Made by a program: the position numbers and the translations under genes
Notes under the pieces: generated by a model
Databases searched by the model: none
Told to the model about the DNA's origin: nothing
Seen by the model: the letters and a program-made list of their open reading frames with translations, nothing else
Shown here: positions 1,849 to 27,836 of the stretch, one piece after another
How the letters are laid out: each line of letters begins with the position of its first letter
Position numbering within the stretch: the first letter of the stretch is position 1
Virus record (IMG/VR): IMGVR_UViG_3300007770_001284
Location: 190,744-254,743 of that record
Strand: one strand, 5' to 3'
Length of the DNA stretch: 64,000 bases

Positions 1849-2772
1849 GTGTTTGAAATTTATATTCCATTTTATAACAGCCCGTTTTGTGCTGAGTATC
1901 AAGCGAAAACGCTGCGAGCATTTATGCGTGACGAAGATGTTACACTAATCTTTGTTGATAACAATATGGGGTATCACCCAGAGGCCTCTTTACGAATTAT
2001 TGAGATTTGCAAAGAGTATGATATAGAGCTTATTGTTAACAATGATCCGCTCTGTGCGAAATTTCAAGAGGGAATAGCGCAAGGTCATGTATCTACTTCC
2101 GATAAGCTGGGCCATACGCTTAATTTGATTTATGGCGTAGTCCAGCAAAGAAAACCTGATTATTTTGGGTTTCTCGATCAGGATTGTTTCGCGTTTAAGC
2201 CCGTTCAGCTTAAAGAATATCTAGATGAGCACGGCGCGTACGGAAAGGTGGTCCCAACACATCCGGACGAAAGTCATGTGACACGATCTGGCGAGCATGT
2301 GTGGAATTTACATGTGATGTGTAATTTTTTTAAGCGAGATTTTCTTTCTAACATGAACGTTAATTTTATGCCAGGGAGCTGGTGCGAGAGGCTTGGTTAT
2401 GGCTATGATGTCATACTAGACACGGGAGGAGTTAATTGGTGGACAATGTATAAAGACATGGATCGATCTCAGTATGTGCTACCAGAAGAACATTTTCTGT
2501 ATTATGATGATATTTCTCTCCTTGACCCCAATAATGATAGTCCTACTAAGACTCTTTATGAAGTGCTTGACAACAAGTGGGTGCATATGGTCCACGCCGC
2601 AAATTCTGGTGCAGCAGCAGACTATCTTAAGCCAAAAACTTCATATATGAAGGGATTCCTTGATTTTGCGTTATTGGATGCGGGTGCCGTTGGTGCCAGC
2701 CCTCGTCCAGAGTCTGACTTCATACCGTCGTACAGAGACCCGAACCGTCATTTTTCTTTTGAGGGTTCCTAA
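1849..2772 (+). CDS. GT-A fold glycosyltransferase-like protein
   Basis: N-terminal IYIPFYN, FVDNN and FLDQD (DxD) motifs. Confidence 0.55.
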   Translation: MFEIYIPFYNSPFCAEYQAKTLRAFMRDEDVTLIFVDNNMGYHPEASLRIIEICKEYDIELIVNNDPLCAKFQEGIAQGHVSTSDKLGHTLNLIYGVVQQRKPDYFGFLDQDCFAFKPVQLKEYLDEHGAYGKVVPTHPDESHVTRSGEHVWNLHVMCNFFKRDFLSNMNVNFMPGSWCERLGYGYDVILDTGGVNWWTMYKDMDRSQYVLPEEHFLYYDDISLLDPNNDSPTKTLYEVLDNKWVHMVHAANSGAAADYLKPKTSYMKGFLDFALLDAGAVGASPRPESDFIPSYRDPNRHFSFEGS

Positions 2773-2797
2773 ACCCACAAGATTAATTTACGTTAAG

Positions 2798-2826
2798 CTG
2801 AAAAAACCTCTCATACCCTCTATAAT
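2798..2826 (+). promoter_or_regulatory. Sigma70-like promoter CTGAAA-N17-TATAAT
   Basis: 17-nt spacing, followed by GGAGG and GTG 2846. Confidence 0.6.
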
Positions 2827-2845
2827 ACATCACATTGGAGGTTTT

Positions 2846-5800
2846 GTGCGTAAGACTAAACTGGTTCCCCCAAATAAGTTCATCTCCCTTCATTCTCATG
2901 ATGGGTTTTCTACTTTTGATGGGCTGGGCTATCCACAAGAGCACATCGACTTTGTCATTGAGAACGGCATGGACGGATGGTGTCTCACAAATCATGGTCA
3001 TATGAATTCATTTGGGCATGCTTTTCTTCATGCGGAAAAGGTCCAGAAGCGTGGGGGTACCTTTAGGTTTGTCCCTGGTTGTGAAATGTACGTTCATCCA
3101 GACCTTGACGCTTGGAAGCTGGATTACGAAATTCGCCAGGCTGCAAAGAAGGGTGATAAAGAAGCGTTGTTCTCATTACGAGAACAGCGGGAAGCAATTA
3201 CGACTCCGCTCACCGCCGTCACAGACCGCGACGATGAAATTATTGATATCGGTAAAGAAGAAGCTGGGCTTACCGTAGAAAATGAAGAGGAAACGAAGTC
3301 TGGAAAGTTTTACGATCCAGTGAAGCGTCGCCATCATTTGGTAGTTTTGCCCAAGACCAGCGAGGGTCTCCAACGTTTGTTCCACCTCGTTAGTAGGGGT
3401 TACAGAGAGGGCTTCTATAGGTTCCCGCGTGTTGACTATAGGATGCTAAGGGAAGCTGCTGAGGGAGGCCATCTAATGGTCTCAACAGCATGTATTGGTG
3501 GCCCAATCGCATACGAGGTCTTTAGGCACGCTCAACAGGTCGAGTTTGATGATTTAAAGCATACGCTGCTTGACGATCCGTCATTTCACCGTAACGTTAT
3601 GACGGGAGTTGGAAATGCGTATCAAGGGCTTGTTGATGCTGTCGGAATTGATGATGTACACCTCGAGCTTCAATTTAACAAACTTCCAGCTCAGCATCTA
3701 GTAAATCGGGCGATCATTGAATTTGCAAATAACCAGGGGCTTCAAGACAAGCTGGTTGTTACAACAGATTCTCATTATGCCCGACCAGAGCATTGGCGTG
3801 AACGTGAGCTTTATAAAAAGCTGGGATGGCTAAACTATCGTGAATTCGATCCATCGAAATTGCCCCAATCAAGAGATGATTTGAAGTGCGAGCTTTATCC
3901 TAAGAACGCTCCTCAGGTTTGGGATACGTATCTAGAGTCAACAGACGGAATGGATTTTTACAATGACCAAGTGGTAAAGGACGCAATCGAGCGTCCGCAT
4001 ACGCTTGTTCACGAGGCTATCCAAGACATCGTTCCCGATCGTACCATGAAGCTTCCTTCTTATGTTGTACCTGAAGGTATGACAGATGATAAGGCTTTGC
4101 TTGAGGCATGTAAGAAGGGTCTTGTTGAGCGAGGGTTGGCAAACGATCCAAAATATATCGAGCGAATAAAGCAAGAACTAAAAATCATCAAAGATAAGAA
4201 TTTTTCTCGATATTTCTTAACAATGGAAGCGATTATTAAGATTGCCAAGAAAGCCATGCTTGTCGGACCAGGACGCGGTTCGGCCGCGGGTAGTCTAGTT
4301 GCCTATGTTCTTAAGTTGACAGACGTTGACCCGTTCGAATACGATCTTATGTTTGGTCGTTTTCTAAACCCAAGTCGTGAGGGTGCCCCAGATATCGATA
4401 CCGATGTTGGTGACCGAGATTTGCTTCTCCAGCTAATGAAAGATGAGTGGGGAGATGAGAATATTATCCCCATCTCGAATTATAATACTTTCAAGCTTAA
4501 GTCCCTTGTGAAGGATATCTCTCGTTTTTATGGAATTCCATTTAACGAGGTAAATAAGGCTCTGTCAACTGTAGATGAAGATGTGAAGCGTGCAGTGTTT
4601 AAGCAGGGGACTGATAAAAACCTGTTCGTTCTACTTTACGAAGATGCTCTAGCTCATTCTAAGAAGTTTAGAGCGTTTATCGAGGCGCATCCAGAGGTCG
4701 CCGCCCCTATCCAGGTTTTGTTTAAACAGAACAAGGCTCTTGGTCGTCATGCAGGAGGTTGCATTGTCGCAGAAGATATAGCTGAAAGAATGCCGCTGAT
4801 CAAAGCTCGAGGTGAGCTCCAGACCCCCTGGGCTGAAGGCATGAACTATAAGCATCTTGAAACATTTGGCTGGATTAAGTTCGATCTTCTCGGTCTTGAA
4901 ACGCTACGGATCATTCAAAGAACGATTGAGCTGATTCTTCAAAGAAAAGAGGGTATTGAGGACCCAACATTCGAGCAGGTCTATGAGTGGTTCAATGCAA
5001 ATATGGATCCCAAGGTTCTTGATATGGATGACCAGCATGTCTATGAGCATGTTTATGCAGGTGGTCGTTGGGCCGGTATCTTTCAGCTAGCGGGAAGAGG
5101 TGCGCAAAACCTCTTTAAGAAAGCCAAGCCCAAGAGCATTATCGATATTGCTACGCTGACCTCTATCTATCGTCCAGGCCCACTCACTGCGAAGGTCGAT
5201 AGATTGTATATCAAGGCCAAGAATAATCCTGAGAAGATTGATTATGGGCATCCACTAATCAAAGAAGTACTAGAAGAAACATACGGCTTGATAGTCTTTC
5301 AAGAGCAGATCATGAAGCTTTGTTCTGTTGTAGCTGGTTTCCCAGAGGAAGAAACAGATACTGTTCGTCGCAGTATTATGAAGCGTAAAGCATCAGAGGC
5401 TGCAGAAAGTCTTGCTAAGGCTCGATCTATTAAGGAGCAGTTTGTTGCTGGCTCTGTTAAGAATGGAGTGGATAGTCAGCTTGCAGATGATTTGTACGAA
5501 AAGATTCTCTTCTTCGCAGGATACGGCTTCAATAAGTCTCATGCAGTTTGTTACGCTATTGACTCTTACTACTGCGCTTGGCTTTTAACATATTTCGAAG
5601 AGGAATGGTTATGCGCTTATCTTGAAGCGATGTCGGGTAATGATAAGAAGCGAGCCAAGGCTTTCGCTGAGGTTAAGACGCTAGGGTATCGAGTTGTGCC
5701 CCTTGATATTAATTACGCGACCAAGGATTGGACAATTCTTGAAGGTAAGAAATTTATGCCTTCTCTTTTGTCTTGTAAGGGTATTGGTGAATCTGCAATC

Positions 5801-6460
5801 GACGAACTTGTGACTAGTCGACCGTATAAGCATATTGACGACTTGTTGTGGGATGATATCGGAAAGTGGAGGCATTCCAAATTTAACAAGCGTGCTTTGG
5901 AGGCGTTAATCAATATTCAAGCATTCGAGTCTATGGATCTTATTGGTGACAACAAGACATTTGAAAGCTACAAACAAATGCATGAAGTGTTGATTGGTAA
6001 AAATTCTGAAATCAAGAAATGGACAAAGAAGGATCCAGAACGTGGTCGTAGAAACTTTAACGAGGCGTTGCTTGATACTCAGGGAGCTGGTGTCTGGACA
6101 CGACGAGAGCGAGTTGAGAATAACGTGCGACATTTCGGTTCATTTAATGCAGCTACACTAGTCCCAAGCGAGGTTCAAGAAAAGCTTGCTAAAATGGACA
6201 TTTTTCCCATTGATGAAATTAATGGTCATGACTTGTATTGGTTCCTCGTGTCAGATGTGAAGCCGAAGCTAACAAAGAACAAGCGGCCCTATCTACTGGT
6301 TACAGCAACTGCATTGTCTGGTCAGACCTATCGGATGTTTTGCTGGAGCTGGGATGGTGAAACCGAACTGCCGCTTTACAGTCTGTGCGTAGCTGAAGTG
6401 AAGAAAAATGATTTTGGATATCAAACTTCTATGAGAAAAATCAAAGTTCTTCAGTTATGA
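2846..6460 (+). CDS. dnaE: DNA polymerase III alpha subunit (C family)
   Basis: PHP motifs LHSHDGFS, TNHGH, TDSHY; GRGSAAGS; PDIDTD; KFDLLGL; YGFNKSHA. GTG start chosen from the GGAGG SD. Confidence 0.95.
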   Translation: MRKTKLVPPNKFISLHSHDGFSTFDGLGYPQEHIDFVIENGMDGWCLTNHGHMNSFGHAFLHAEKVQKRGGTFRFVPGCEMYVHPDLDAWKLDYEIRQAAKKGDKEALFSLREQREAITTPLTAVTDRDDEIIDIGKEEAGLTVENEEETKSGKFYDPVKRRHHLVVLPKTSEGLQRLFHLVSRGYREGFYRFPRVDYRMLREAAEGGHLMVSTACIGGPIAYEVFRHAQQVEFDDLKHTLLDDPSFHRNVMTGVGNAYQGLVDAVGIDDVHLELQFNKLPAQHLVNRAIIEFANNQGLQDKLVVTTDSHYARPEHWRERELYKKLGWLNYREFDPSKLPQSRDDLKCELYPKNAPQVWDTYLESTDGMDFYNDQVVKDAIERPHTLVHEAIQDIVPDRTMKLPSYVVPEGMTDDKALLEACKKGLVERGLANDPKYIERIKQELKIIKDKNFSRYFLTMEAIIKIAKKAMLVGPGRGSAAGSLVAYVLKLTDVDPFEYDLMFGRFLNPSREGAPDIDTDVGDRDLLLQLMKDEWGDENIIPISNYNTFKLKSLVKDISRFYGIPFNEVNKALSTVDEDVKRAVFKQGTDKNLFVLLYEDALAHSKKFRAFIEAHPEVAAPIQVLFKQNKALGRHAGGCIVAEDIAERMPLIKARGELQTPWAEGMNYKHLETFGWIKFDLLGLETLRIIQRTIELILQRKEGIEDPTFEQVYEWFNANMDPKVLDMDDQHVYEHVYAGGRWAGIFQLAGRGAQNLFKKAKPKSIIDIATLTSIYRPGPLTAKVDRLYIKAKNNPEKIDYGHPLIKEVLEETYGLIVFQEQIMKLCSVVAGFPEEETDTVRRSIMKRKASEAAESLAKARSIKEQFVAGSVKNGVDSQLADDLYEKILFFAGYGFNKSHAVCYAIDSYYCAWLLTYFEEEWLCAYLEAMSGNDKKRAKAFAEVKTLGYRVVPLDINYATKDWTILEGKKFMPSLLSCKGIGESAIDELVTSRPYKHIDDLLWDDIGKWRHSKFNKRALEALINIQAFESMDLIGDNKTFESYKQMHEVLIGKNSEIKKWTKKDPERGRRNFNEALLDTQGAGVWTRRERVENNVRHFGSFNAATLVPSEVQEKLAKMDIFPIDEINGHDLYWFLVSDVKPKLTKNKRPYLLVTATALSGQTYRMFCWSWDGETELPLYSLCVAEVKKNDFGYQTSMRKIKVLQL

Positions 6461-6505: not shown

Positions 6506-7537
6506 TTGTTTGCTGGAAAATTTGAAAACTTCACTGAATGTTATCTATCATTGATTGATGATGTCTATAATAATTCGACGTATTTATCTGCACCGAGAGG
6601 TCAGAAAATTAGGGAAAAACTTGGAGTATCTTTTACGATTGAGAATCCTCGTCACCGCATCCCCTACGTTGCGGGAAGAAAGTTTAGTGTGACGTATATG
6701 GTTGCCGAATTGTTGTGGTATCTTTCTGCAAATAATAAAACTGAATGGATCTCGAAGTACTCAGCTTTCTGGAAAGATATTAGTGATGATGGTGTGACAG
6801 CAAACTCTGCTTACGGTGCTCGGCTTTTTGCCCCTAATGAGAAGATTGCCAATGGTAGATTTACGCAATGGCAATATGTCGTAAACGAACTAAGAAGAGA
6901 TCCAGACTCCCGCAGGGCAGTAATGCACTTGAGAATGCCGGCAGACGGAATTGATGCGAAGTTAGATGTACCATGCACACTTACGCTGCAATTTTTTATT
7001 CGAGATAATGAGCTGCATATGATTGTTAACATGCGAAGCTCTGATTTGATTTTTGGAATTGCTTATGACATCCCTGCTTTTACATTTTTTCAAGAAATTT
7101 TAGCTGGACAATTGGGTGTCGAGCTTGGATCTTATACTCACATGAGCAATTCTCTTCACATTTACGAACGTCATTTTGAGATGGTCGAGACGATTTTAAG
7201 CGAAAAATGTCTAGCTAAAACGCGCAAGCTAACTGATATTCATGGTCCAATGCCAGCGATTGACGCTGCTGGGTGCAACCAGCAGGCATTAACATACTGG
7301 ATTAAGAAGCTAATGACATTTGAGAAAGCACTTTCTGATGCTACAACTCCTCGAGATGCCGTTCGTCTGTGGACTGCTTATTTTGCTTATGCTAATAATT
7401 CTGATCAAATATGGGCTGACTGGGCTCGGGTCTTAGCTGCACAAAGAGCAAGAAGACTTGGCGAGCCAGCAGAAGCAAACGAAATTCAAGCTATCACAGA
7501 TTTTAGTGGATATTCATTTAATATCAGGAGTCGTTAA
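6506..7537 (+). CDS. Thymidylate-synthase-family enzyme, probable dCMP hydroxymethylase/hydroxylase (T4 gp42-like)
   Basis: AELLWY, RRAV, DVPCTLTLQFFIR, MRSSDLIFGIAYD (Asp where ThyA has Asn), SLHIYERH. Confidence 0.8.
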   Translation: MFAGKFENFTECYLSLIDDVYNNSTYLSAPRGQKIREKLGVSFTIENPRHRIPYVAGRKFSVTYMVAELLWYLSANNKTEWISKYSAFWKDISDDGVTANSAYGARLFAPNEKIANGRFTQWQYVVNELRRDPDSRRAVMHLRMPADGIDAKLDVPCTLTLQFFIRDNELHMIVNMRSSDLIFGIAYDIPAFTFFQEILAGQLGVELGSYTHMSNSLHIYERHFEMVETILSEKCLAKTRKLTDIHGPMPAIDAAGCNQQALTYWIKKLMTFEKALSDATTPRDAVRLWTAYFAYANNSDQIWADWARVLAAQRARRLGEPAEANEIQAITDFSGYSFNIRSR

Positions 7538-8649
7538 TGACGTATCAGTATGATTATCTTATTGTCGGTGCTGGAATATTCGGCGCGACGTTTGCTAGAG
7601 AAATGACTGACGCGGGCAAAAAGTGCCTTGTCATTGATAAGCGGAAGCACATCGGTGGTAACGTGTATTCTGAAAAGCGAAATGGCATTGACGTACACGT
7701 ATATGGTGCCCATATTTTTCATACAAACAATGATCGAATTTGGGAGTACGTAAATCGATTTACGACATTCAACAATTACATCAATAAACCGAAGGTACGC
7801 TTTGGCGATCGCATTTTTTCGTTTCCCATTAATCTAATGACGCTTCATCAACTATGGGGTGTTATGGACCCCGCTGAAGCGAAAGCAAAGCTTAATGAAG
7901 TGAGGATTCATTGTGAGAATCCTGAAAATTTAGAAGACTGGATCCTTTCCCAGGTTGGGCGAGAAGTATACGAAACGTTCATCCGTGGTTATACAATGAA
8001 GCAATGGCAACGCGACCCGCGGGAACTCCCTTCGTCTATTATCAAGAGACTTCCCATTCGTCTTACATTTGATGAAAATTATTTTTTCGACAAGTACCAA
8101 GGAATTCCTGTTGACGGCTACACTGCAATGGTTGATAATATGCTGGAAGGAATTGAGGTGAAGACAGGTATTGATTATTTTGAAAACAGAGCCGTCTTTA
8201 TTCCTGCTGCAAAGAAGACTGTGTTCACTGGTAAAATTGATGAATTTTTTGGGTTTGTTCATGGTGAGCTTGAGTATCGCACTTTGCGGTTCGAGCATGA
8301 AGAGCTGATGGGTGACTTTCAAGGAAACGCTGTAGTGAACTATACTTCACCAGATGTCCCCTTTACTCGGATTGTAGAACACAAGCATTTTTTGCCTGAA
8401 TCGGCTGGAAAACTGGATAACACGATTATCACAAGAGAGTATTCCGCAGAGTATGACAGGAGCAAAACGCCATATTATCCTATCGGCGATGCGAAGAATA
8501 TAGCAATGTATAAGAAGTATTGCGAGATGGCTGAATCGGCAAAGGATGTCATTTTCGGGGGCCGGCTAGCAGAGTACAAATACTACGATATGCACCAAGT
8601 TATCGGTTCAGCACTTGTAAAAGCGAAAAGAGAACTTGAAAATAAATGA
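7537..8649 (+). CDS. glf: UDP-galactopyranose mutase
   Basis: IVGAGIFG, HIGGN, YGAHIFHT, YQGIP, PYYP, GRLAEYKYYDMHQ. Confidence 0.93.
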   Translation: MTYQYDYLIVGAGIFGATFAREMTDAGKKCLVIDKRKHIGGNVYSEKRNGIDVHVYGAHIFHTNNDRIWEYVNRFTTFNNYINKPKVRFGDRIFSFPINLMTLHQLWGVMDPAEAKAKLNEVRIHCENPENLEDWILSQVGREVYETFIRGYTMKQWQRDPRELPSSIIKRLPIRLTFDENYFFDKYQGIPVDGYTAMVDNMLEGIEVKTGIDYFENRAVFIPAAKKTVFTGKIDEFFGFVHGELEYRTLRFEHEELMGDFQGNAVVNYTSPDVPFTRIVEHKHFLPESAGKLDNTIITREYSAEYDRSKTPYYPIGDAKNIAMYKKYCEMAESAKDVIFGGRLAEYKYYDMHQVIGSALVKAKRELENK

Positions 8650-8687
8650 AGATTTGGCTATAATAAAATAGCAAATTTGGAGAATAG

Positions 8688-9740
8688 ATGAGAGTTTTGT
8701 ATAGTTTTTGGGGGTTTATTACTCCGCTTGAAAAAAATAGTATTGTAAATACACCTGATGGTGAGCGTGGGAACAGGGTGGACTTTGTTACCGAGCTTAT
8801 GAAGCGTGGCCACGTACCGATTCAACTTCAAAAGATGCGGGATATCGAGCGATATCCGGGTGTTGAATATGATGACGTAGGGTTTCCCGATGGTGATATT
8901 CTTTATGTCGAATGGCGTTGGCCCACTTGGAAGAACAGCGGCGATGACATTTTCGAGTCTGATTATACACGCCAGTGTAAGGTTCTTGACTATTATCATG
9001 ATAAAGGAATACCCATCATTATTCATGACGGTGATTTGAAGATGACCCCTGAAGAAGAGCTCCGCTGGCCGAATGCAGTTCTAGCTGATGCGTGCGTGAA
9101 CTCGCGACAGCAAACGAGGGAGCGTATTACCATTCCGTGGTGCAATTATATGAAACGCTATCTTGACCCTGTCGAGTATTCCTACAATTACACGTACGTT
9201 GGGAACAATTATGAGAGAGACGATCAATTTCAGAAGTATTACATAAGTTCAAGTCGCTCGCTTCGAGATCGAGGAATTCAAACGTCTATTTACGGTAATT
9301 GGTTACAAAAGTCTCCAGAGCGAAAAGACCCAAAAGAATTGCTGCAGGGAACTCCCTATGTTGCCTTTGGCCCACGCTTGGCGTACAAAGATATTTTCGG
9401 AGTCTTGAATTCTTCTATCACTGTTACCCATATCACAAAAGACGCGTATACGCCGTATGGTAATATTACGGGGAGATTTTTTGAAGCGATCAAAAGCAAC
9501 GTACCAGCGTTAGTCCCAATAGAATTTAAGCACGCTCTTCCTGTTGGACTAAATGGTCAACTTGTGGTGGAATCAACTCGTGATGTAATAAGCAAAGTAA
9601 ACTGGCTTTCATCGTTGAATGCCGAGCAAAGAAAAGCACTAGTAGACGAGCAGGAAGAGGCTCTTCGAACAGTGATTGATCCCAGACCAGAATACAGGGT
9701 AGATCTTCTTGAGCATATTTTGGGAGATTACCACGGATGA
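8688..9740 (+). CDS. DNA glycosyltransferase, T4 beta-glucosyltransferase-like (GT-B)
   Basis: 350 aa; colinear resemblance to T4 BGT as recalled: DGDLKM, YVGNNYER, SIYGN, NITGRFFEAIKS. Confidence 0.7.
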   Translation: MRVLYSFWGFITPLEKNSIVNTPDGERGNRVDFVTELMKRGHVPIQLQKMRDIERYPGVEYDDVGFPDGDILYVEWRWPTWKNSGDDIFESDYTRQCKVLDYYHDKGIPIIIHDGDLKMTPEEELRWPNAVLADACVNSRQQTRERITIPWCNYMKRYLDPVEYSYNYTYVGNNYERDDQFQKYYISSSRSLRDRGIQTSIYGNWLQKSPERKDPKELLQGTPYVAFGPRLAYKDIFGVLNSSITVTHITKDAYTPYGNITGRFFEAIKSNVPALVPIEFKHALPVGLNGQLVVESTRDVISKVNWLSSLNAEQRKALVDEQEEALRTVIDPRPEYRVDLLEHILGDYHG

Positions 9741-10291
9741 AGGTAGCATTCATTGGACCCGACATGACAGGAAAGTCAAATATTGCTGAAGAACTGTCTC
9801 GTCAGACAGACGTTCCTGTGTTCAAAAATTCCAGTGAATGGAAAACGCAACTTGATAGTCCAGATTATTTTCTTAATCTACTCAAATATGGTGGCCCATT
9901 TTTAATGGACTTTATTCGCCAAACAGGCGTATCAGTTATTTTAGACCGTTTTTATCCGTGTGAGTATGTCTACGCAGAAGCATTCGAGCGAGAGACAGAT
10001 ATGAATGCAATTTTGTGGATGGACGAGAATTTTTCTGAAGTAGGTGGGAAGTTTATCATATGTTTGCGGAAAGACTACTCTGGTCTGGTCGATGATCAAT
10101 ATCCTGACCAATTACCACCTGAAATGTTGAAAAAGTTAGACATTTATTATCGTAAGTTTGCTGAGCGTACAAGTTGTGATTATCTGATTTTAGAGACAGA
10201 TGACATGGACTTGAACAAGCAGGTAAAAGAGATTAAAATATTTTTAGGAATTAGAGAAATGGAAGCGGAGGATTTTTGTGTATACTCGTAA
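9737..10291 (+). CDS. dNMP/thymidylate-kinase-like P-loop kinase
   Basis: GPDMTGKS Walker A; ILDRFY. Confidence 0.8.
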   Translation: MKVAFIGPDMTGKSNIAEELSRQTDVPVFKNSSEWKTQLDSPDYFLNLLKYGGPFLMDFIRQTGVSVILDRFYPCEYVYAEAFERETDMNAILWMDENFSEVGGKFIICLRKDYSGLVDDQYPDQLPPEMLKKLDIYYRKFAERTSCDYLILETDDMDLNKQVKEIKIFLGIREMEAEDFCVYS

Positions 10292-11282
10292 AGCGTTAGT
10301 TACAGGGTGCTGTGGATTTATCGGCGGTCATCTTACGAAGATGTTAGTTGAGCAAGGGTGGGATGTAACTGGTGTCGACGATTTGTCAAATGGCGACCCC
10401 TCTGTATTAGACGGTATAGATATTAGGTGTATCCCACCTGCTCTTTTAGTGGCTTACGAAACACAGGCCGTCGATGCTAGTAAGACGCTGGTTATTACTG
10501 GTGATTTTGCTCATGAATATGTTCTTATGAAAATTGCTGAAGGTGAATTTGATGTAATTTTCCATCTGGCTGCCAATCCGCGTGTGGAGTTTTCTGTTAA
10601 GAATCCCGCATCGACTACCCATACAAACGTTCAAAAAACAATTGAATTAATGACAGCAGCTACCGGAAAAATTGATCGCTTTGTTTTTGCATCATCTTCG
10701 TCCAGCTATGGCAATACCGACCAATTTCCAACAAGAGAATCTTCTCCCACAAATCCAGAGTCACCTTACGGACTACAGAAGCTTGTCGTGGAACAATTTG
10801 GTGAATTGTACAACCGATTGTACAGTATGGATTTTGTTGCACTTCGGTTTTTCAATGTGTACGGCCCTGGCCAGGTGGGAGACTCTCCTTATTCAACTGC
10901 AATCGCTGCGTGGTGTACACGTCTTAAGAAAAATGAGCCCCTTCGAAGTGATGGAGACGGAGAACAACGGCGTGATATGGTGTATGTAAATGATGTTGCA
11001 AGTGCTATGGTGACAGCCGCTGATCACCCCGATTCGTTAGGTTACGCAATGTATAATGTTGCAACAGGCGTAGCTGTTACTAACAATGAAATTCTTAAGA
11101 CACTTAAAGAGTATTTTCCTGAGATGGTTATCAATCATGCTCCCGCTCGCCCAGGCGACGTAAAATTTACCTTGGGTTCTATAGATAAAATTAATGAGGA
11201 GCTCGGATGGATTCCCCGAAAGGAGTTTTGGGCTGGGCTCAGAAGCACGTTAAAGTGGTGGGGCTTATTGGACGATGAATAG
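10278..11282 (+). CDS. NAD-dependent nucleotide-sugar epimerase (extended SDR, GalE-like)
   Basis: VTGCCGFIGG, ASSSSSYG, YGLQK, LRFFNVYGP, GDGEQRRD. Confidence 0.88.
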   Translation: MYTRKALVTGCCGFIGGHLTKMLVEQGWDVTGVDDLSNGDPSVLDGIDIRCIPPALLVAYETQAVDASKTLVITGDFAHEYVLMKIAEGEFDVIFHLAANPRVEFSVKNPASTTHTNVQKTIELMTAATGKIDRFVFASSSSSYGNTDQFPTRESSPTNPESPYGLQKLVVEQFGELYNRLYSMDFVALRFFNVYGPGQVGDSPYSTAIAAWCTRLKKNEPLRSDGDGEQRRDMVYVNDVASAMVTAADHPDSLGYAMYNVATGVAVTNNEILKTLKEYFPEMVINHAPARPGDVKFTLGSIDKINEELGWIPRKEFWAGLRSTLKWWGLLDDE

Positions 11283-11706
11283 AAACGCATGGACCAGCAA
11301 ATCGGTGACAGTAGAAATGCCATGGGGTATAGAGACTCGCTGGAGCGCTGTCCCCACAATTACTGGAAAAAAGCTTGAAATTTATTCTGGTTTATGTACA
11401 AGCTTAAAATTTCATAAACAAAAGAATGAAGTTTTGTTTGTTGCATCTGGGGAAGTGACTGTTATTTTTGCTTGCGAGCGACATTTTGAAGACCCAATTC
11501 AGTATCCATCGTCAAAAGAAGTTTTAGGTCCAGGTGGTATGCTGAATGTCCAAGCAGGGTGCCCTTATCGGGTGTGTGCAAATAAAGATTCTGTAGTATA
11601 TGAAATTTCGGATGGAAGTAGTGAGAACAGTGTCCGGCTTGAGGACGAATATGGAAGAGCAATCGACACAATTGACGAGTTTCAGTTTATTTATCCAAAG
11701 GACTAA
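11275..11706 (+). CDS. Cupin-fold protein (sugar isomerase-like)
   Basis: MPWG, TSLKFHKQKNE; second-motif His appears replaced. Confidence 0.65.
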   Translation: MNRNAWTSKSVTVEMPWGIETRWSAVPTITGKKLEIYSGLCTSLKFHKQKNEVLFVASGEVTVIFACERHFEDPIQYPSSKEVLGPGGMLNVQAGCPYRVCANKDSVVYEISDGSSENSVRLEDEYGRAIDTIDEFQFIYPKD

Positions 11707-11729: not shown

Positions 11730-12569
11730 ATGAGCTCGATCGACCCAAATTCAGTAGATGTAGTGATTTACCACGCTGATTGCACTGACGGTTACGGGGC
11801 TGCGTATTCAGCATGGAAGCTGTTGGGAAAACGTGCCGAGTTTTATCCGTGTAAGCACGGTAATCCCCCCCCAAAAGTAAAGGGAAAGAACGTTGTTATT
11901 TTAGACTTCTCGTTTACGAATGCAGTTACAAAAAAGATGATAAAGTCTGCAAAAAACCTCATCGTGATTGACCACCATAAATCTGCAATGGTAGAATTAC
12001 ATGATATAACAAATACACATTTTGACATGACTAAGTCGGGTGCAATGCTGGCTTGGGAATTTTTTCATCCTGGAAAAGATGCTCCCAAGTTTATTCAATA
12101 TATTCAAGATCGTGATCTTTGGAAGTGGGAGCTCCCATACTCAAGGGAGTTCGCAGCAGCGTTTGATATGGTCCCCTTTGAGTTTGAGGAATTTGAAAAG
12201 TTTGAAGATGATTCGGTGTTTGATGACGCTGTTAAACGCGGTTCGTATATACTTGCTTATTCTAAGACAGTTGTAAAGAAGGTTTGCGAGAAAGCTGAGC
12301 CAAGAAAGTTTGAAGGGAAGGATGTTCTTGTTGTGAACGCTTCTCACTGGATGTCAGAAATCGGAGCAAGACTTTCACCAGATTGTGATTTTGCATTGAT
12401 TTGGTACTGGGATCATGAAGATAAGGTTACGAAGGTCAGCTTACGTGCATTTCACGATTCTGTTGACGTATCTGAAATTTCGAAAAAGTTTGGTGGCGGT
12501 GGTCACAAAAAAGCAGCAGGATTTACGCTTCCTAAGGAGACTCACATTGAAGAACTCTTTGACACTTGA
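11730..12569 (+). CDS. DHH/DHHA1 phosphoesterase (NrnB-like)
   Basis: YHADCTDG, LDFS, IDHHKS, DRDLW, GGGGHKKAAGF. Confidence 0.88.
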   Translation: MSSIDPNSVDVVIYHADCTDGYGAAYSAWKLLGKRAEFYPCKHGNPPPKVKGKNVVILDFSFTNAVTKKMIKSAKNLIVIDHHKSAMVELHDITNTHFDMTKSGAMLAWEFFHPGKDAPKFIQYIQDRDLWKWELPYSREFAAAFDMVPFEFEEFEKFEDDSVFDDAVKRGSYILAYSKTVVKKVCEKAEPRKFEGKDVLVVNASHWMSEIGARLSPDCDFALIWYWDHEDKVTKVSLRAFHDSVDVSEISKKFGGGGHKKAAGFTLPKETHIEELFDT

Positions 12570-13143
12570 TAGAACGCCAAAGTTTGATATTGTTTATTTA
12601 GATCCGCCATGGGACTACAAAGGCCAGCTACAACATAGTAAACCTGGAATGGGTGATACAGGTGGGGCTCGCAAGCATTATGGTACGCTCAAACTAAAAC
12701 AGCTTAAGCAGTTTCCAATGCAGGAGCTTCTTAACGAAGACTCGCTTGTCTTTATGTGGGTAACAAACCCACACCTCGATCAGGGCATTGAGCTGCTTAA
12801 GAGCTGGGGGCTGAAATATTCTACAGTCGCCTTTGTGTGGAACAAGATGCGGGTTAATCCTGGGTTTTATACCATGTCGCAGTGCGAGCTTTGCCTTGTT
12901 GGAAAAAATGGCAAGATTCCTCGACCTCGAGGTGCCAGAAACGTGCGACAATATCTAGAGCACCTCCGTGAAGAGCATAGCAAAAAGCCGGATGAAGTTA
13001 GGGCTCGCATTGAGCAGATGTTTCCAGACCAGACGAAGGTTGAACTGTTTGCTCGCCACCAGTTACCTGGATGGTCAGTTTGGGGAGATGAAGTCGAAAG
13101 CTGTGACAGTCTTAAAGGGTACTTGAATGAGCTCGGATGGTAG
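12559..13143 (+). CDS. MT-A70 family methyltransferase
   Basis: DPPW, FMWVTN, HSKKP, ELFAR; TTG start approximate. Confidence 0.88.
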   Translation: MTLDRTPKFDIVYLDPPWDYKGQLQHSKPGMGDTGGARKHYGTLKLKQLKQFPMQELLNEDSLVFMWVTNPHLDQGIELLKSWGLKYSTVAFVWNKMRVNPGFYTMSQCELCLVGKNGKIPRPRGARNVRQYLEHLREEHSKKPDEVRARIEQMFPDQTKVELFARHQLPGWSVWGDEVESCDSLKGYLNELGW

Positions 13144-13555
13144 ACCGCCATGGGATGAAATCTGGATGGGGTTTGCTCATTCAATAGCTCGTCGTTCCTA
13201 TGATCCGCGACATCAGGTTGGTGCTGTTGTTGTTACGAAAGAAAATACACAAGTGTTAGCTGTTGGGTATAACGGGAATTATACAGGCGGACCCAATGAG
13301 GCAGAGTCAGAAGTTCCGGGTGAGTCTGGAATGATTCATGCTGAAATTAACGCGCTGCTTAAATGTGATTACAATATTCTTGCGGAAAAGATAATGTACG
13401 TTACACTAAGTCCGTGTCGAATGTGCGCAAAAGCGATGGTAAATGGTGGGATTAGCGAAGTCATTTATAACGAGCAGTATCGTGATATTTCTGGGCTGGA
13501 TCTATTGAGGGCCGCTGGAGTAAAAGTAAGGCGCTATTCCTATAAGAAATACTAG
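13127..13555 (+). CDS. dCMP deaminase (ComEB-like)
   Basis: HAEINAL, SPCRMC, GYNG. Confidence 0.88.
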   Translation: MSSDGRPPWDEIWMGFAHSIARRSYDPRHQVGAVVVTKENTQVLAVGYNGNYTGGPNEAESEVPGESGMIHAEINALLKCDYNILAEKIMYVTLSPCRMCAKAMVNGGISEVIYNEQYRDISGLDLLRAAGVKVRRYSYKKY

Positions 13556-13572: not shown

Positions 13573-13603
13573 GTCTAGTGCTTTGTTTGCCGGAGTTGTT
13601 CTT

Positions 13604-14950
13604 ATGCGTAGAGGTCTAGTAGAAAATCTTGCTGAAATTTCTGTTTGTGCAGTTTTTCGAGCATATTCTAGCGAGCTAACTTATCTTGCGTTGCAAGAGG
13701 GCCAAGTCCGTGGAATGCTTCTAGTTGAGGAATTCAGTAGTGAAGATGCCAACAAACTAGACGCAGCAGTAAAAGAAATAAAGGCTTTGGTCGCTGCAGC
13801 AACAGACAAATTTGCAGATGCGGCAGAGGTCTGGTCCAAGCCATTCGGTGAATTTGATACATTCATGACAGACATGCCTGATGCTGCGGAGATCGTTACT
13901 CTGATACAGGGTGGCGACGCAGACAAGCTTGGAAAGATGACAGCGGATTATACAAAAAAATTGCAAACAGTTGCTGGTGATATTGCCGCTTTGATCGCTG
14001 CGGTTGGCGCCGTGCAGAAAGATTTGGCAAATTTTAAAGACGCAGTGGGTGAAAATGGTGCTCAGACCATCGGCGAGTTGGCCGGCCAAGAAGGCGGAGA
14101 GTTCCCGGCGCTCGATAAATTAGATGCAGGGATTCAGCAAGCATATCAAATTCCTGGGTGGTTTGATAAGATTTGGGCCGCTGGCTCGAAAGCAGCAGAA
14201 CAAGAAAGTGAGGGTGGCTTCTTTAAGAAGGCGATGGCGTTCATCGGCGGCTTATTTAAGAGCGATAAAAGTGGACGAGTTGTAGACGCTAGCCTAATCG
14301 CTGACGCCATTAAGCAGACTCCCTATGATGTGTTCATGGGCGTCGATCTTTCTGATGTGCAAACAAGCCTCGAAAGTGCCACCGAAGTCGCCGGTGAAGA
14401 AACGACACAGGCTACATCGGCAGCGCAATCAGCGGCAGGGGGAGCCGATGGCGTAACTGATGCTGGTGAGGGGGACGCCGACCCATCTGATGAGATAGAA
14501 ACAGCAGCTAAGGAGCCAGAGGCTCCCGGGGTGGCTGTTTCTAATGCCCTCGACGCTTGGTATGATGGGTTAGCCGCTGAGTCTCAAAAAACAATAAAGG
14601 CAAACGGTCGATATGACGCACTAAAGACCGGAATTAATGACACGCTTGATGGGCTGTCCAAAGCTGTAGAGAAGGAAGTTGGGAATGCCGTCGGCGCTTG
14701 GCGCAAGGAGCATGAAGAAGCTATGGGAAGAAGATTCTCTAAGAAAAATATGGACGCCCTGCAGGCCATGATTCCTAAATTGGCATCGACAATGATGCAG
14801 AAGAAAGAAGAATCAGTTGGACGATTTACTGTTGGCACAGTCCACAGAGCGGTTTATCGTTATCTTGATGCTTCGCATCGCAGTGATAAAATTTTATTTG
14901 AGTCCACGAGGTGGGGCCAATTAGCGGGTGTTGGAGAAGACAATGAGTAG
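13604..14950 (+). CDS. Ala/acidic-rich hypothetical protein, probably virion-associated
   Basis: Long ORF with LLVEE and LFES motifs; no enzyme motif recognised. Confidence 0.6.
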   Translation: MRRGLVENLAEISVCAVFRAYSSELTYLALQEGQVRGMLLVEEFSSEDANKLDAAVKEIKALVAAATDKFADAAEVWSKPFGEFDTFMTDMPDAAEIVTLIQGGDADKLGKMTADYTKKLQTVAGDIAALIAAVGAVQKDLANFKDAVGENGAQTIGELAGQEGGEFPALDKLDAGIQQAYQIPGWFDKIWAAGSKAAEQESEGGFFKKAMAFIGGLFKSDKSGRVVDASLIADAIKQTPYDVFMGVDLSDVQTSLESATEVAGEETTQATSAAQSAAGGADGVTDAGEGDADPSDEIETAAKEPEAPGVAVSNALDAWYDGLAAESQKTIKANGRYDALKTGINDTLDGLSKAVEKEVGNAVGAWRKEHEEAMGRRFSKKNMDALQAMIPKLASTMMQKKEESVGRFTVGTVHRAVYRYLDASHRSDKILFESTRWGQLAGVGEDNE

Positions 14951-20935: not shown

Positions 20936-21340
20936 ATGGGCATTTTTATGAAATTGGATAAATTAATGAGAGAATATTTGGGTGAATCTGTTCCGCAAAG
21001 GAACCCGCTCAAAGATATTATGCCCCCCGATCTAGTGTGCGAAACAACAAGCCTTCCAGTGCAGGCAACTGAGGTTTCATGGGTTGTTGAAGAGGGGCCA
21101 GAAAGGCTTGTCCGGACATTTCATTTTCCAGATTTATCGACCAGAAATTGGTTCGTTTCAGAGATTATGGAAAAAGAAAAAGAAACAGACCATTATGGGA
21201 AGATATTGGTTGAGGGAAATGATGTTAAAATCGAGGTTCAAACTCACGATTTAAATCGAGTTACCGAGTTAGACCAGGAATACGCAGAGTATTGTGATGA
21301 TGTCTTTGGAGACGTTGGGTTTATGAAGGAGCTGTTTTAA
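20936..21340 (+). CDS. Pterin-4-alpha-carbinolamine dehydratase-like protein
   Basis: LVRTFHF, DHY, VQTHDL, VTELD; leader KLMREYLGES. Confidence 0.6.
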   Translation: MGIFMKLDKLMREYLGESVPQRNPLKDIMPPDLVCETTSLPVQATEVSWVVEEGPERLVRTFHFPDLSTRNWFVSEIMEKEKETDHYGKILVEGNDVKIEVQTHDLNRVTELDQEYAEYCDDVFGDVGFMKELF

Positions 21341-27667: not shown

Positions 27668-27836
27668 GATTTTGGTAGAAATGCGCGCAAAAGGATTGAT
27701 ATCTGAGACTGAGATTGTCTATAAAGAGGGTGATCTTTATGTCGCAAAGGATGTTGTGACAAATTCAAAAAGAATTATTGAGTATGGAGGCCCAGTCCGT
27801 GAGGGCCGCGGCGGTAAGAGGCTGCTCAAAGGATGA
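27642..27836 (+). CDS. Small hypothetical protein
   Basis: Coupled ORF. Confidence 0.55.
   Translation: MEQGTLPPEILVEMRAKGLISETEIVYKEGDLYVAKDVVTNSKRIIEYGGPVREGRGGKRLLKG

What the first reader, a model, noticed from the sequence alone, without database searches (positions are those of the whole stretch)
6506..11706. Predicted furanose-sugar DNA hypermodification: gp42-like synthase, Glf, BGT-like transferase, kinase and epimerase
Seen: a tightly coupled run of a TS-family enzyme with Asp at the nucleotide-specificity site, an intact UDP-galactopyranose mutase, a 350-aa GT-B colinear with T4 beta-glucosyltransferase (as recalled: DGDLKM ~ FTDIRL, ITGRFFEAIKS ~ ITLRVWETMAS), a dNMP kinase, an SDR epimerase and a cupin. 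Known: T4 makes glucosyl-hmC with gp42, gp1 and BGT. GalE converts UDP-Glc to UDP-Galp, and Glf converts UDP-Galp to UDP-Galf and also acts on UDP-arabinose. Arabinosylated cytosine is reported in RB69-type phages. Inference: this phage makes a UDP-furanose donor and attaches galactofuranose (or arabinofuranose) to 5-hydroxy(methyl)cytosine. I know of no described galactofuranosyl base. The SDR lacks the TSEVYG Glu of UDP-xylose synthase, which favours the hexose route.
Basis: partly seen in the sequence, partly recalled or inferred. Interest (0 to 1): 0.92.

Follow-up and report, generated by a model that had tools for sequence, protein, structure and literature searches.

The report
Phage sugar-on-cytosine DNA modification genes
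An uncultivated marine jumbo phage carries a compact gene set that most likely replaces cytosine with 5-hydroxymethylcytosine and then attaches a sugar to it. The sugar is probably a five-membered-ring (furanose) form, which would be a new variation on the T4-type DNA disguise against bacterial defences. No chemistry has been done.

Summary
Window 6506-11706 (+) holds six co-directional genes that abut or overlap. They encode a thymidylate-synthase homologue, an intact UDP-galactopyranose mutase (Glf), a 350-aa GT-B glycosyltransferase, a Tmk-like nucleotide kinase, a 4-epimerase-like SDR and a small cupin.

- **TS homologue:** it has the dCMP-hydroxymethylase signature of T4 gp42 and MilA. 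It lacks the D169N signature of the newly described 5-hydroxy-dCMP synthases.
- **GT:** it hits no Pfam model, but its donor-binding half is homologous to T4 beta-glucosyltransferase (BGT), and BGT is its top PDB fold match.
- **Synteny:** among 51 distinct relatives in viral metagenome contigs, the GT lies within 7.5 kb of such a TS in 48. It usually also sits with the kinase and the SDR.
- **Glf:** it is an accessory gene, recruited into this module in three separate lineages. One of these also carries a UDP-xylose synthase.

Best reading: glycosyl-5hmC DNA with a furanose donor, D-galactofuranose favoured and L-arabinofuranose possible. The sugar is inferred only, and no GT residue pattern tracks Glf.

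Two published findings lower the novelty. Arabinofuranosyl-5-hydroxycytosine is known in RB69 and DLP3, and a phage Glf route to UDP-Galf was proposed for Rhizobium phage RL38J1 in 2026. Verdict: a new variant of a known kind.

The parts
6506..7537 (+). Thymidylate-synthase-family enzyme (343 aa), predicted dCMP 5-hydroxymethylase of the MilA / T4 gp42 type, with a ~100-aa C-terminal extension
   Evidence: PF00303, 1.6e-35. Best PDB sequence hits are MilA CMP hydroxymethylase 5jnh/5b6d (E ~6e-43); T4 gp42 scores 7e-17. Signature in E. coli numbering: W80, D143, C146, S167, D169, G173, D177, the same as T4 gp42. RB69 gp48 and RL38J1 gp216 instead have A80, E143, N169, V173. The MilA ribose determinants A176/K133 are Ser/Arg here, which indicates a deoxy substrate. 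It scores far below all NCBIfam thymidylate-synthase cut-offs.
7537..8649 (+). UDP-galactopyranose mutase (Glf, 370 aa), FAD-dependent pyranose-to-furanose mutase
   Evidence: PF03275, 1.3e-76. TIGR00031 at 367 bits, above the 303.75 cut-off. 51% identity to E. coli Glf, with conservation throughout the length including the N-terminal GxGxxG dinucleotide-binding motif. Present in all 13 distinct members of the window's clade. Glf genes also sit in the module in L049 and in L056/L059, and the three lineages' sequences are no closer to each other than to E. coli Glf.
8688..9740 (+). GT-B glycosyltransferase (350 aa), a distant relative of T4 beta-glucosyltransferase; predicted to glycosylate 5hmC in DNA
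   Evidence: Model pLDDT 91.3. Foldseek top PDB hit is T4 BGT 1c3j. A family profile of 244 sequences against T4 BGT gives hhalign 96.3%, E 1.9e-9 over residues 161-328. R177, R263 and E266 lie opposite BGT R195, R269 and E272. 15 of 25 relatives hit PF13524 and none hits PF09198. A TS homologue lies within 7.5 kb in 48 of 51 distinct relatives.
9737..10291 (+). Tmk-like P-loop nucleotide kinase (184 aa); predicted to phosphorylate 5hm-dCMP
   Evidence: Conserved GPDxxGK(T/S) P-loop and DRxYP motif. PF02223 hits in 5 of 13 relatives. Homologous to RB69 gp45, the kinase encoded beside RB69's TS homologue and first arabinosyltransferase (hhalign 96%, E 3e-9). Start overlaps the GT stop by 4 nt.
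10278..11282 (+). Extended-SDR nucleotide-sugar 4-epimerase-like enzyme (334 aa)
   Evidence: PF01370, 1.1e-52. Nearest solved structures are 6wjb, 4zrm, 6dnt, WbgU and WbpP, all 4-epimerases. The Ser/Tyr/Lys triad is kept, and Thr sits at the E. coli GalE Y299 gatekeeper position. Best NCBIfam hits are GalE and TviC, both below cut-off. Conserved in nearly all relatives with GT identity of 40% or more.
11275..11706 (+). Small cupin (143 aa), function unresolved (possibly a sugar or nucleotide-sugar isomerase/epimerase)
   Evidence: Cupin_1 hit at 0.0017. Model pLDDT 90.9 with a cupin fold. PDB matches are generic cupins, including the CapF cupin domain and sugar isomerases. Atlas neighbours carry PF01050/PF07883. 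Canonical metal ligands are not conserved. Present in the Glf+ clade and in the Glf- sister clade, so it is not tied to Glf.
11730..12569 (+). DHH/DHHA1 phosphoesterase (279 aa), a conserved neighbour of the module (possibly nucleotide salvage)
   Evidence: PF01368/PF02272. phrog_4771, 1e-78. 62-90% identical in relatives.
12415..13143 (+). MT-A70 family methyltransferase (PHROG relatives annotated as DNA methyltransferase); the true start is probably downstream of 12569
   Evidence: PF05063, 4.6e-26. phrog_359, 1.6e-63. The L001 orthologue is called as 200 aa.
13127..13555 (+). dCMP deaminase (142 aa)
   Evidence: PF00383, 1.6e-21. phrog_174, 2e-49. Conserved next to the module in most relatives.
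2660..6460 (+). DnaE-type DNA polymerase III alpha, immediately upstream; marks the replication-gene context of the module
   Evidence: phrog_405, 2e-221. PHP/DNA_pol3_alpha domains in orthologues. At most ~29% identity to any GenBank phage.

Best explanation
This is a pre- and post-replicative cytosine hypermodification module of an uncultivated marine jumbo phage (contig of at least 254 kb).

Inferred from sequence signatures:
1. The TS homologue converts dCMP to 5-hydroxymethyl-dCMP with methylene-tetrahydrofolate.
2. The adjacent Tmk-like kinase takes it to the diphosphate. Host enzymes make the triphosphate, and the phage DnaE-type polymerase incorporates it.

Inferred from synteny and distant homology to T4 BGT:
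3. The GT-B enzyme transfers a sugar from a UDP-sugar onto the 5-CH2OH of hmC in DNA.

Inferred from gene content only:
4. The donor is made on site. The SDR 4-epimerase converts a host UDP-sugar to its C4 epimer, and Glf contracts the ring.
5. The most economical route is UDP-Glc -> UDP-Galp -> UDP-Galf, giving galactofuranosyl-5hmC. The alternative is UDP-Xyl -> UDP-L-Arap -> UDP-L-Araf.

The presumed benefit is resistance to restriction enzymes, CRISPR and defences that recognise glucosyl-hmC.
For: - Gene identities.
- Hydroxymethylase rather than hydroxylase signature, and deoxy-substrate determinants (criteria from PMC13326640 and PMC5175136).
- GT fold and homology to T4 BGT, including the UDP-binding Arg/Arg/Glu.
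- GT-TS linkage in 48 of 51 distinct relatives. Kinase and SDR are present in nearly all relatives with GT identity of 40% or more.
- The kinase is homologous to RB69 gp45, which occupies the same position in the experimentally characterised RB69 cluster (PMC13326640).
- Glf sits inside the module in three lineages whose Glf sequences are no closer to each other than to E. coli Glf.
- In L049 the order UXS-Glf-kinase-GT-SDR-TS reproduces three of the four steps of the proven C. jejuni UDP-L-Araf pathway (PMC10615251). This makes sense only if Glf feeds this GT.
- No other recognisable GT or Galf-transferase is found in the 64-kb window.
- Precedent: furanosides on cytosine exist in RB69 and DLP3, and Glf is proposed to supply UDP-Galf in RL38J1.
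Against: - There is no chemical or expression evidence.
- Relatives at 40-62% GT identity lack Glf, and no conserved GT position distinguishes Glf+ from Glf- lineages. A furanose-specific donor pocket is therefore not visible.
- The SDR is not an equivalog-level GalE. Its closest structures include HexNAc epimerases. Some relatives carry a second GalE-like SDR, which would be redundant if the core SDR were a plain GalE.
- No dCTPase (gp56-like) is found in the window, so complete replacement of C is unproven.
- Only 64 kb of a genome of at least 254 kb was visible.
- The GT's N-terminal (acceptor) domain has no significant sequence match to BGT.
Confidence: 0.55

Rival explanations
1. Same module, but the sugar is L-arabinofuranose. 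The SDR acts as a UDP-xylose 4-epimerase on UDP-Xyl from the host, or from a UXS encoded elsewhere in the genome. Glf acts as a UDP-arabinopyranose mutase.
For: UXS-type SDRs (E ~1e-95 to human UXS1) sit in the module of five related lineages. One of them (L049) has it directly fused in order with Glf. The bacterial pathway UGD-UXS-epimerase-Glf homologue is experimentally proven (PMC10615251). D-Araf on cytosine already exists in RB69 and DLP3.
Against: No UXS or UGD is found in the 64-kb window, nor in the 20-kb loci of the 13 distinct members of the window's clade. UDP-Glc is universal in hosts whereas UDP-Xyl is not. The IMG/VR scan for UXS was saturated and could not test the rest of the genome.
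Confidence: 0.2
2. Glycosyl-5hmC with a pyranose sugar (for example galactose). The GT uses the epimerase product directly, as it presumably does in Glf-less relatives. Glf serves something else: a second unrecognised transferase, a further sugar on the chain, or host glycan remodelling.
For: The core GT+TS+kinase+SDR exists without Glf in most lineages. No Glf-correlated substitutions appear in the GT. This GT itself is invisible to Pfam, so another cryptic transferase among the many unannotated ORFs cannot be excluded.
Against: Three independent Glf recruitments lie directly inside the module. In the window's clade Glf is wedged between the TS and the GT, with a shared junction. No second GT or WbbI-like Galf-transferase was detected.
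Confidence: 0.17
3. The TS homologue is a 5-hydroxy-dCMP synthase. The sugar would then be ether-linked directly to C5, as in RB69, DLP3 and RL38J1.
For: The gene order TS-GT-kinase matches RL38J1 gp216-215-214 and RB69 gp48-47/46-45. The kinase is homologous to RB69 gp45.
Against: The diagnostic D169N is absent. All 48 GT-linked TS homologues keep Asp169, plus W80 and G173, like T4 gp42. The closest solved relative is a hydroxymethylase.
Confidence: 0.04
4. The GT does not act on DNA but on a protein, lipid or small molecule. The phage would then carry plain 5hmC, or the TS homologue is a dCMP methylase or an ordinary dTMP synthase.
For: The acceptor domain has no significant sequence match to BGT. 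Retaining GT4 enzymes with non-DNA acceptors match the fold nearly as well.
Against: The near-obligate GT-TS-kinase linkage holds across divergent phages. BGT is the top fold hit and the only named relative detectable by sequence. Asp177 and Asp143 argue against a dUMP methylase or a methyl product (criteria in PMC13326640).
Confidence: 0.04

Closest known systems
T4 glucosyl-5hmC system (gp42 dCMP hydroxymethylase, gp1 kinase, alpha/beta-glucosyltransferases)
   Same: A TS-family hydroxymethylase with the same active-site signature. A GT-B transferase whose donor domain is homologous to BGT, including the UDP-binding Arg/Arg/Glu. In T4 the b-gt and 42 genes are also adjacent.
   Different: The TS is closer to MilA than to gp42 and is 100 aa longer. 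The GT is not a PF09198 member. The kinase is Tmk-like rather than gp1-like. The phage encodes its own donor-tailoring enzymes (epimerase and mutase) instead of using host UDP-Glc. No gp56-type dCTPase is seen. The replicase is DnaE-type.
Arabinofuranosyl-5-hydroxycytosine clusters of RB69 and DLP3 (PMC13326640)
   Same: A compact TS-GT-Tmk-like-kinase core, with a homologous kinase. The nucleotide-sugar donor is phage-encoded. A furanose sugar is attached to cytosine C5.
   Different: Those TS homologues are flavin-dependent hydroxylases (D169N) that give an ether at C5. The donor there is UDP-D-Araf, built from ribulose-5-P by an isomerase, a kinase/uridylyltransferase and a phosphatase, not by an epimerase plus mutase. 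Their GTs show no sequence similarity to this one.
Rhizobium phage RL38J1 / Pootjesviridae (Gal-Glc(n)-5hoC; Glf gp84)
   Same: A phage-encoded Glf (45% identical), proposed to make UDP-Galf for a base-proximal galactose. The gene order is TS-GT-kinase.
   Different: The acceptor is 5hoC (N169). Glf is encoded about 60 kb from the core. GT gp215 is unrelated in sequence. There is no SDR epimerase in the core. The furanose form there is also a gene-based proposal.
C. jejuni HS:15 UDP-beta-L-arabinofuranose pathway (PMC10615251)
   Same: An SDR 4-epimerase plus an FADH2-dependent Glf homologue. Relative L049 adds a UXS.
   Different: That is a capsule pathway and includes a UDP-Glc dehydrogenase. 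Here the product is presumed to go to DNA.
MilA, CMP 5-hydroxymethylase of mildiomycin biosynthesis (PDB 5jnh/5b6d)
   Same: The closest solved sequence relative of the TS homologue, of similar length (325-342 aa). Asp at both the 143 and 177 positions.
   Different: MilA prefers CMP through Ala176/Lys133. This protein has Ser/Arg, as in the dCMP enzymes.

Membership tests
[quoted passage not shown] | TS fold with the catalytic Cys (E. coli C146) | tested here: met
   PF00303, 1.6e-35. Cys is aligned at position 146.
[quoted passage not shown] | Asp in place of N177 (cytosine specificity) and an acidic residue in place of L143 (admits water, giving a hydroxymethyl product) | tested here: met
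   D177 and D143 are present in the window protein. D177 is in all 48 GT-linked homologues and D143 in 46 of them; L062 and L063 have Asn at 143. Criteria are from PMC13326640.
[quoted passage not shown] | Deoxyribose preference (Ser167 and Arg126 equivalents, not MilA's Ala176/Lys133) | tested here: met
   RSSD and DSRR motifs against MilA RAND and DSKR. Mutational basis in PMC5175136.
[quoted passage not shown] | Produces 5hm-dCMP from dCMP and CH2-THF | not testable with these tools
   Needs an enzyme assay or an in vivo nucleoside LC-MS assay.
5-hydroxy-dCMP synthases (RB69 gp48, DLP3 gp80, RL38J1 gp216) | Asn at the E. coli ThyA D169 position (D169N) | tested here: not met
   Asp169 is retained. 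RB69 gp48 and RL38J1 gp216 show N169, A80 and V173 in the same alignment.
UDP-galactopyranose mutase (Glf/UGM) | Scores above the curated equivalog cut-off; full-length conservation including the N-terminal dinucleotide-binding motif | tested here: met
   TIGR00031 at 367.2 bits against 303.75. 51% identity to E. coli Glf with conservation along the full length, including GxGxxG.
UDP-galactopyranose mutase (Glf/UGM) | UGM-type rather than UNGM-type residues (His59/Lys169 in E. coli against Arg/Arg in C. jejuni UNGM). The criterion is recalled from memory. | tested here: inconclusive
   His and Lys are present as in E. coli. The criterion could not be verified in the paper library. Discrimination of UDP-Galp from UDP-Arap is not possible from sequence.
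T4 beta-glucosyltransferase family (Pfam PF09198, CAZy GT63) | Match to the family HMM | tested here: not met
   No PF09198 hit for the window protein or for any of 25 relatives. 15 of 25 hit PF13524 instead.
T4 beta-glucosyltransferase family (Pfam PF09198, CAZy GT63) | GT-B fold with a BGT-like UDP-binding C-domain (R195, R269, E272) | tested here: met
   Foldseek top hit is 1c3j. hhalign 96.3%, E 1.9e-9, with R177/R263/E266 aligned. No EX7E motif of the retaining GT4 enzymes is present, by inspection of the sequence.
T4 beta-glucosyltransferase family (Pfam PF09198, CAZy GT63) | Catalytic base equivalent to Asp100 in the N-domain | tested here: inconclusive
   A forced global alignment puts D100 opposite the near-invariant E75 of the EWRWP motif, at low confidence. 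D114 and D116 are also conserved.
T4 beta-glucosyltransferase family (Pfam PF09198, CAZy GT63) | Acceptor is 5hmC in duplex DNA | not testable with these tools
   Only inferred, from TS linkage in 48 of 51 relatives.
UDP-glucose 4-epimerase (GalE) | Equivalog-level HMM score | tested here: not met
   TIGR01179 at 150.6 bits against a 262.3 cut-off. TviC is the next-best hit.
UDP-glucose 4-epimerase (GalE) | Extended-SDR NAD-binding motif and Ser/Tyr/Lys catalytic triad, without the dehydratase Asp/Glu pair | tested here: met
   The GxxGxxG-type motif, S140, Y164 and K168 align with E. coli GalE. The gatekeeper Y299 is Thr here. The nearest structures are all 4-epimerases. Absence of the dehydratase acid pair was judged by eye only.
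Tmk-like 'nucleotide kinase' of phage cytosine-glycosylation clusters (RB69 gp45 type) | P-loop NMP-kinase homologous to RB69 gp45 and encoded beside the TS homologue and the GT | tested here: met
   hhalign 96%, E 3e-9. Motifs. PF02223 hits in 5 of 13 relatives. Synteny. The substrate is untested.

The most novel reading that the evidence does not exclude
A widespread marine jumbo-phage lineage uses a BGT-related DNA glycosyltransferase with a conserved hydroxymethylase-kinase-epimerase core. Beside the core is a plug-in 'sugar-tailoring slot' that holds Glf, UDP-xylose synthase, a second GalE-like SDR, an FAD oxidoreductase or a nucleotidyltransferase/HAD pair. The result would be a natural series of different glycosyl-5hmC bases. 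In the window phage this would be the first furanoside (D-Galf or L-Araf) attached through the hydroxymethyl group of 5hmC.
Probability: 0.4. Interest if true: 0.72.

Novelty: new variant of a known kind. Interest (0 to 1): 0.6.

Why it matters
If the prediction holds, it adds a chemically distinct member, a furanosyl-oxymethyl cytosine, to the short list of natural glycosylated DNA bases.

It would also show that phages diversify the sugar by swapping nucleotide-sugar tailoring genes around a fixed transferase core. That is the pattern expected from an arms race with type IV restriction enzymes, DNA glycosylases and other defences that read specific sugars on hmC.

The GT family has 469 representative clusters and no Pfam or PHROG annotation for the window protein. 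Together with its Tmk-like kinase, it is a useful marker for finding hypermodified genomes in metagenomes. The enzymes could also serve for selective labelling of 5hmC.

The phage recurs in marine metagenomes from many studies, so the modification could be ecologically common. It could also bias sequencing-based surveys.

Tried and rejected
- **DNA and GT searches in GenBank phages.** Megablast of the cluster and tblastn of the GT found nothing. The lineage has no cultured relative.
- **Direct sequence searches of the GT.** phmmer against the PDB gave only noise. The BGT link needed profiles and structure.
- **Homology to other candidate GTs.** I tested RL38J1 gp215, the two pieces of RB69 gp46/47, and the two ~350-aa proteins downstream of Glf in Aeromonas phage Aes012. 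None is similar.
- **A Glf-correlated specificity signature in the GT.** One conservative site passed the strict criteria. Under loose criteria, L049 shared none of the 21 clade-specific sites. The donor could not be read from the GT.
- **UXS elsewhere in this phage's genome.** A single-protein scan did not return the window's contig. A profile scan was saturated, with 578 UXS-like hits and only 80 shown. Both are inconclusive.
- **UDP-Glc dehydrogenase near the L049 UXS.** None found.
- **Function of the cupin.** The fold is confirmed, but Foldseek gives only generic cupins.
- **UNGM specificity residues.** I could not confirm them in the paper library, so that criterion is from memory.
- **5hoC-synthase reading.** Considered and rejected because the D169N signature is absent.
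- **Plain thymidylate synthase.** Considered and rejected (D177 and D143; scores far below the TS equivalog cut-offs).
- **Minus-strand ORFs inside the cluster** (7930-8322, 8658-9026). These were treated as spurious because the + strand genes are all supported by homology.
- **Promoter and terminator scan.** It showed nothing beyond shuffle expectation for terminators. One strong promoter-like site lies at 8636-8664, just before the GT. I did not interpret it.

Full report
**What is there.** Window 6506-11706 carries six + strand ORFs with shared or overlapping junctions.

- **TS homologue, 6506-7537.** It is a thymidylate-synthase homologue (PF00303, 1.6e-35).
- **Glf, 7537-8649.** It is a bona fide UDP-galactopyranose mutase. 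It hits PF03275 at 1e-76, passes NCBIfam equivalog TIGR00031 at 367 bits against a 303.75 cut-off, and is 51% identical to E. coli Glf over its full length.
- **GT, 8688-9740.** This 350-aa protein has no Pfam, PHROG, NCBIfam or PDB sequence hit.
- **Kinase, 9737-10291.** It is a P-loop kinase.
- **SDR, 10278-11282.** It is an extended SDR (PF01370, 1e-52).
- **Cupin, 11275-11706.** It is a small cupin.

A DnaE-type polymerase lies directly upstream. A DHH phosphoesterase, an MT-A70 methyltransferase and a dCMP deaminase follow downstream.

The window is the last 64 kb of a 254,743-bp metagenomic contig. The phage has no close GenBank relative. It also encodes GroEL, a sigma-70 factor and peptide deformylase. 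It recurs in marine and seawater metagenomes from about ten studies.

**The TS homologue.**

- Its best solved relatives are MilA CMP hydroxymethylases (E ~6e-43). Thymidylate synthases score about 1e-23 and T4 gp42 scores 7e-17.
- I aligned it with E. coli ThyA, T4 gp42, RB69 gp48 and RL38J1 gp216. It has W80, D143, C146, S167, D169, G173 and D177, exactly the gp42 pattern.
- The two experimentally proven 5-hydroxy-dCMP synthases instead have A80, E143, N169 and V173 (pairwise alignment).
- Lee et al. (PMC13326640) give the criteria. N177D sets cytosine specificity. An acidic residue at 143 correlates with non-methyl products. D169N is diagnostic for hydroxylation. The window protein therefore reads as a hydroxymethylase, not a hydroxylase.
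- MilA's CMP preference rests on Ala176 and Lys133 (PMC5175136). The window protein has Ser and Arg at those positions, as in the dCMP enzymes.
- D169, D177 and the rest of the signature hold in all 48 distinct TS homologues found next to relatives of the GT. The one exception is position 143, where L062 and L063 have Asn.

**The glycosyltransferase.**

- A 25-sequence alignment gave a confident model (pLDDT 91.3, pTM 0.88) with two Rossmann-like halves.
- The top Foldseek PDB hit is T4 beta-glucosyltransferase (1c3j, E 7.9e-10; 1qkj at TM 0.65). GT4-type retaining enzymes (7fga, 7qsg, MshA, BshA, WaaG) follow closely.
- By sequence, the narrow family profile aligned to BGT with 75% probability.
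- An exhaustive profile search found 469 representative clusters. BGT then detected several members directly (best 3e-7 in a 268-sequence set).
- A 244-sequence profile aligned to BGT at 96.3%, E 1.9e-9, over the whole donor domain (GT 161-328 against BGT 177-333). The invariant R177, R263 and E266 fall opposite BGT R195, R269 and E272. I recall these as UDP-contacting residues; their numbering was checked.
A forced global alignment places BGT LFTD100IRLP opposite the invariant YVE75WRWP, at low confidence.
- The family is not a PF09198 member. 15 of 25 relatives hit PF13524 instead.

**Comparative genomics.** This is the strongest evidence.

- I fetched 60 IMG/VR loci and five other contigs that encode relatives of the GT. 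I then searched their ORFs with the window's proteins.
- Among 51 distinct GT proteins, a TS homologue lies within 7.5 kb in 48. Two of the three exceptions are truncated loci; the third is L058.
- The kinase and the SDR accompany the GT in nearly all relatives with GT identity of 40% or more.
- The kinase family is homologous to RB69 gp45 (96%, E 3e-9). That Tmk-like kinase is encoded beside RB69's TS homologue and first arabinosyltransferase. The order TS-GT-kinase also matches RL38J1 gp216-215-214, although the GTs themselves are unrelated in sequence.

**Glf is accessory.**

- It is present in all 13 distinct members of the window's own clade (GT identity of 69% or more).
- It is absent from the sister clade (59-62%) and from most others.
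- It reappears inside the module in L049 (GT 42%) and in L056/L059 (GT 31%).
- The three Glf lineages are no closer to one another than to E. coli Glf: window-L049 52.6%, window-E. coli 51.0%, L049-E. coli 52.8%, and L056 28-34% to all. This fits three separate recruitments, though I did not build a rooted tree.
- In L049 the gene before Glf is a UDP-glucuronate decarboxylase (E ~1e-95 to human UXS1). The order there is UXS-Glf-kinase-GT-SDR-TS.
- UXS, an SDR 4-epimerase and a Glf homologue are three of the four enzymes of the proven C. jejuni UDP-L-arabinofuranose pathway (PMC10615251). That arrangement is hard to explain unless Glf feeds the GT.

**A variable tailoring slot.** The slot next to the core holds other genes in other relatives.

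- UXS without Glf occurs in L032, L034, L035 and L036.
- A second GalE/TM0509-like SDR plus a 260-aa unknown protein occurs in L038-L046, L050 and L053. L048 and L054 carry a related second SDR, without a detected 260-aa homologue.
- L034 has an FAD oxidoreductase plus a short SDR.
- L001 has a HAD phosphatase plus a nucleotidyltransferase upstream of the polymerase.

**Which sugar.**

- The SDR keeps the epimerase Ser/Tyr/Lys triad and has Thr at the GalE Y299 gatekeeper position.
- Its nearest structures are UDP-hexose and UDP-HexNAc 4-epimerases. It is below the GalE and TviC equivalog cut-offs.
- Glf has His and Lys at the positions that, as I recall, are Arg/Arg in the C. jejuni UDP-GalNAc mutase. 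I could not verify this criterion.
- No UXS, UGD, HAD/nucleotidyltransferase or WbbI-like gene is in the window.
- The route needing the fewest assumptions is therefore host UDP-Glc -> UDP-Galp -> UDP-Galf. UDP-L-Araf remains possible if UDP-Xyl comes from the host or from the unseen 190 kb of the genome.
- Against a furanose-specific GT, no conserved GT position separates Glf+ from Glf- lineages.

**The cupin.** It has a confident cupin fold (pLDDT 90.9) but lacks conserved metal ligands. It matches only generic cupins, among them the CapF cupin domain and sugar isomerases. It also occurs in the Glf-less sister clade. Its role is open.

**Comparison with the known.**

- Furanosides on cytosine are already established. 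RB69 and DLP3 carry D-arabinofuranosyl chains on 5-hydroxycytosine.
- For RL38J1, which carries galactose-glucose chains on 5hoC, the same paper proposes that the phage Glf makes UDP-Galf.
- Several things differ here. The acceptor is predicted to be 5-hydroxymethylcytosine. The transferase is a BGT relative. The donor is made by epimerase plus mutase within one operon-like unit. The host lineage is an uncultivated marine jumbo phage.

I rate it a new variant of a known kind, with interest 0.6. My approximate confidences are as follows.

| Claim | Confidence |
|---|---|
| The module makes a glycosylated hmC in DNA | about 0.8 |
| The sugar is a furanose | about 0.55 |
| The sugar is specifically D-galactofuranose | about 0.35-0.4 |

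Nothing here has been shown chemically.

Noticed in passing
L049:7379-12966; L032:9018-15249; L034:3106-13024; L035:4330-12350; L036:7906-18088: Five related phage lineages carry a UDP-glucuronate decarboxylase (UXS) next to the GT-TS-kinase-SDR core. This suggests pentosyl (xylosyl or arabinosyl) hmC variants. L049 combines UXS with Glf.
   Followed up: partly
L038:11034-12809 (also L039-L046, L050, L053; related second SDR only in L048 and L054): A second GalE/TM0509-like SDR plus a conserved 260-aa protein with no family hit sits between the GT and the core SDR. This implies yet another sugar variant. It also argues that the core SDR is not simply a GalE.
   Followed up: partly
L034:7724-9474: A DAO-family FAD oxidoreductase and a short-chain dehydrogenase are inserted between the polymerase and the kinase-GT genes. 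They may be further sugar-tailoring enzymes.
   Followed up: no
L001:1836-3159: The closest relative outside the window's own contig set (GT 81% identical) has a HAD hydrolase and an NTP_transferase upstream of the polymerase. Both are absent from the window. This resembles the sugar-1-P activation genes of RB69 and DLP3.
   Followed up: no
L002:1-5291 and L003: In one relative the DnaE-type polymerase gene is broken into pieces with Intein_splicing domains, so the replicase is intein-invaded.
   Followed up: no
window 11730-12569: A DHH/DHHA1 phosphoesterase (NrnA/RecJ-like) is conserved at 62-90% identity directly after the module. It may supply dNMPs from degraded host nucleic acid.
   Followed up: no
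window 12415-13143: The mechanical MT-A70 ORF overlaps the DHH gene by about 150 nt. The orthologue in L001 is called as 200 aa, so the true start is probably later.
   Followed up: no
window 13583-14950: A 455-aa protein with no family hit follows the dCMP deaminase. It is conserved (30-43% identity) in many relatives at the same position.
   Followed up: no
window 6506-7537 (residues ~240-343): The TS homologues of this phage group are 320-350 aa, about 100 aa longer than T4 gp42. MilA has a similar overall length, but the extension shows no significant alignment to it.
   Followed up: no
window 15385-16098, 20936-21340, 27833-29416, 29753-30508, 31615-32262, 40553-42190: By way of the Pfam tags of identical or orthologous proteins, the window also encodes a protein with a Sod_Fe_C domain, a pterin-4a-carbinolamine dehydratase, GroEL, a sigma-70 factor, peptide deformylase and a PolyA_pol/CCA-type nucleotidyltransferase. 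The match of locus genes to these window coordinates is inferred.
   Followed up: no
L099:6992-10266 (Aeromonas phage Aes012, JN377895.1): In cultured T4-like Aeromonas phages (Tulanevirus), Glf is followed by two unannotated ~350-aa proteins. They have no detectable similarity to this GT family. This could be another Glf-linked DNA or glycan modification and is testable in culture.
   Followed up: partly
L004:223-1026; L034:1731-2516: Some relatives encode an Fpg/Nei-type DNA glycosylase a few kb upstream of the module.
   Followed up: no
window 8636-8664: The best sigma-70-like promoter match in the region (11 of 12) lies at the end of glf, just upstream of the GT start, in the only intergenic gap of the cluster.
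   Followed up: no
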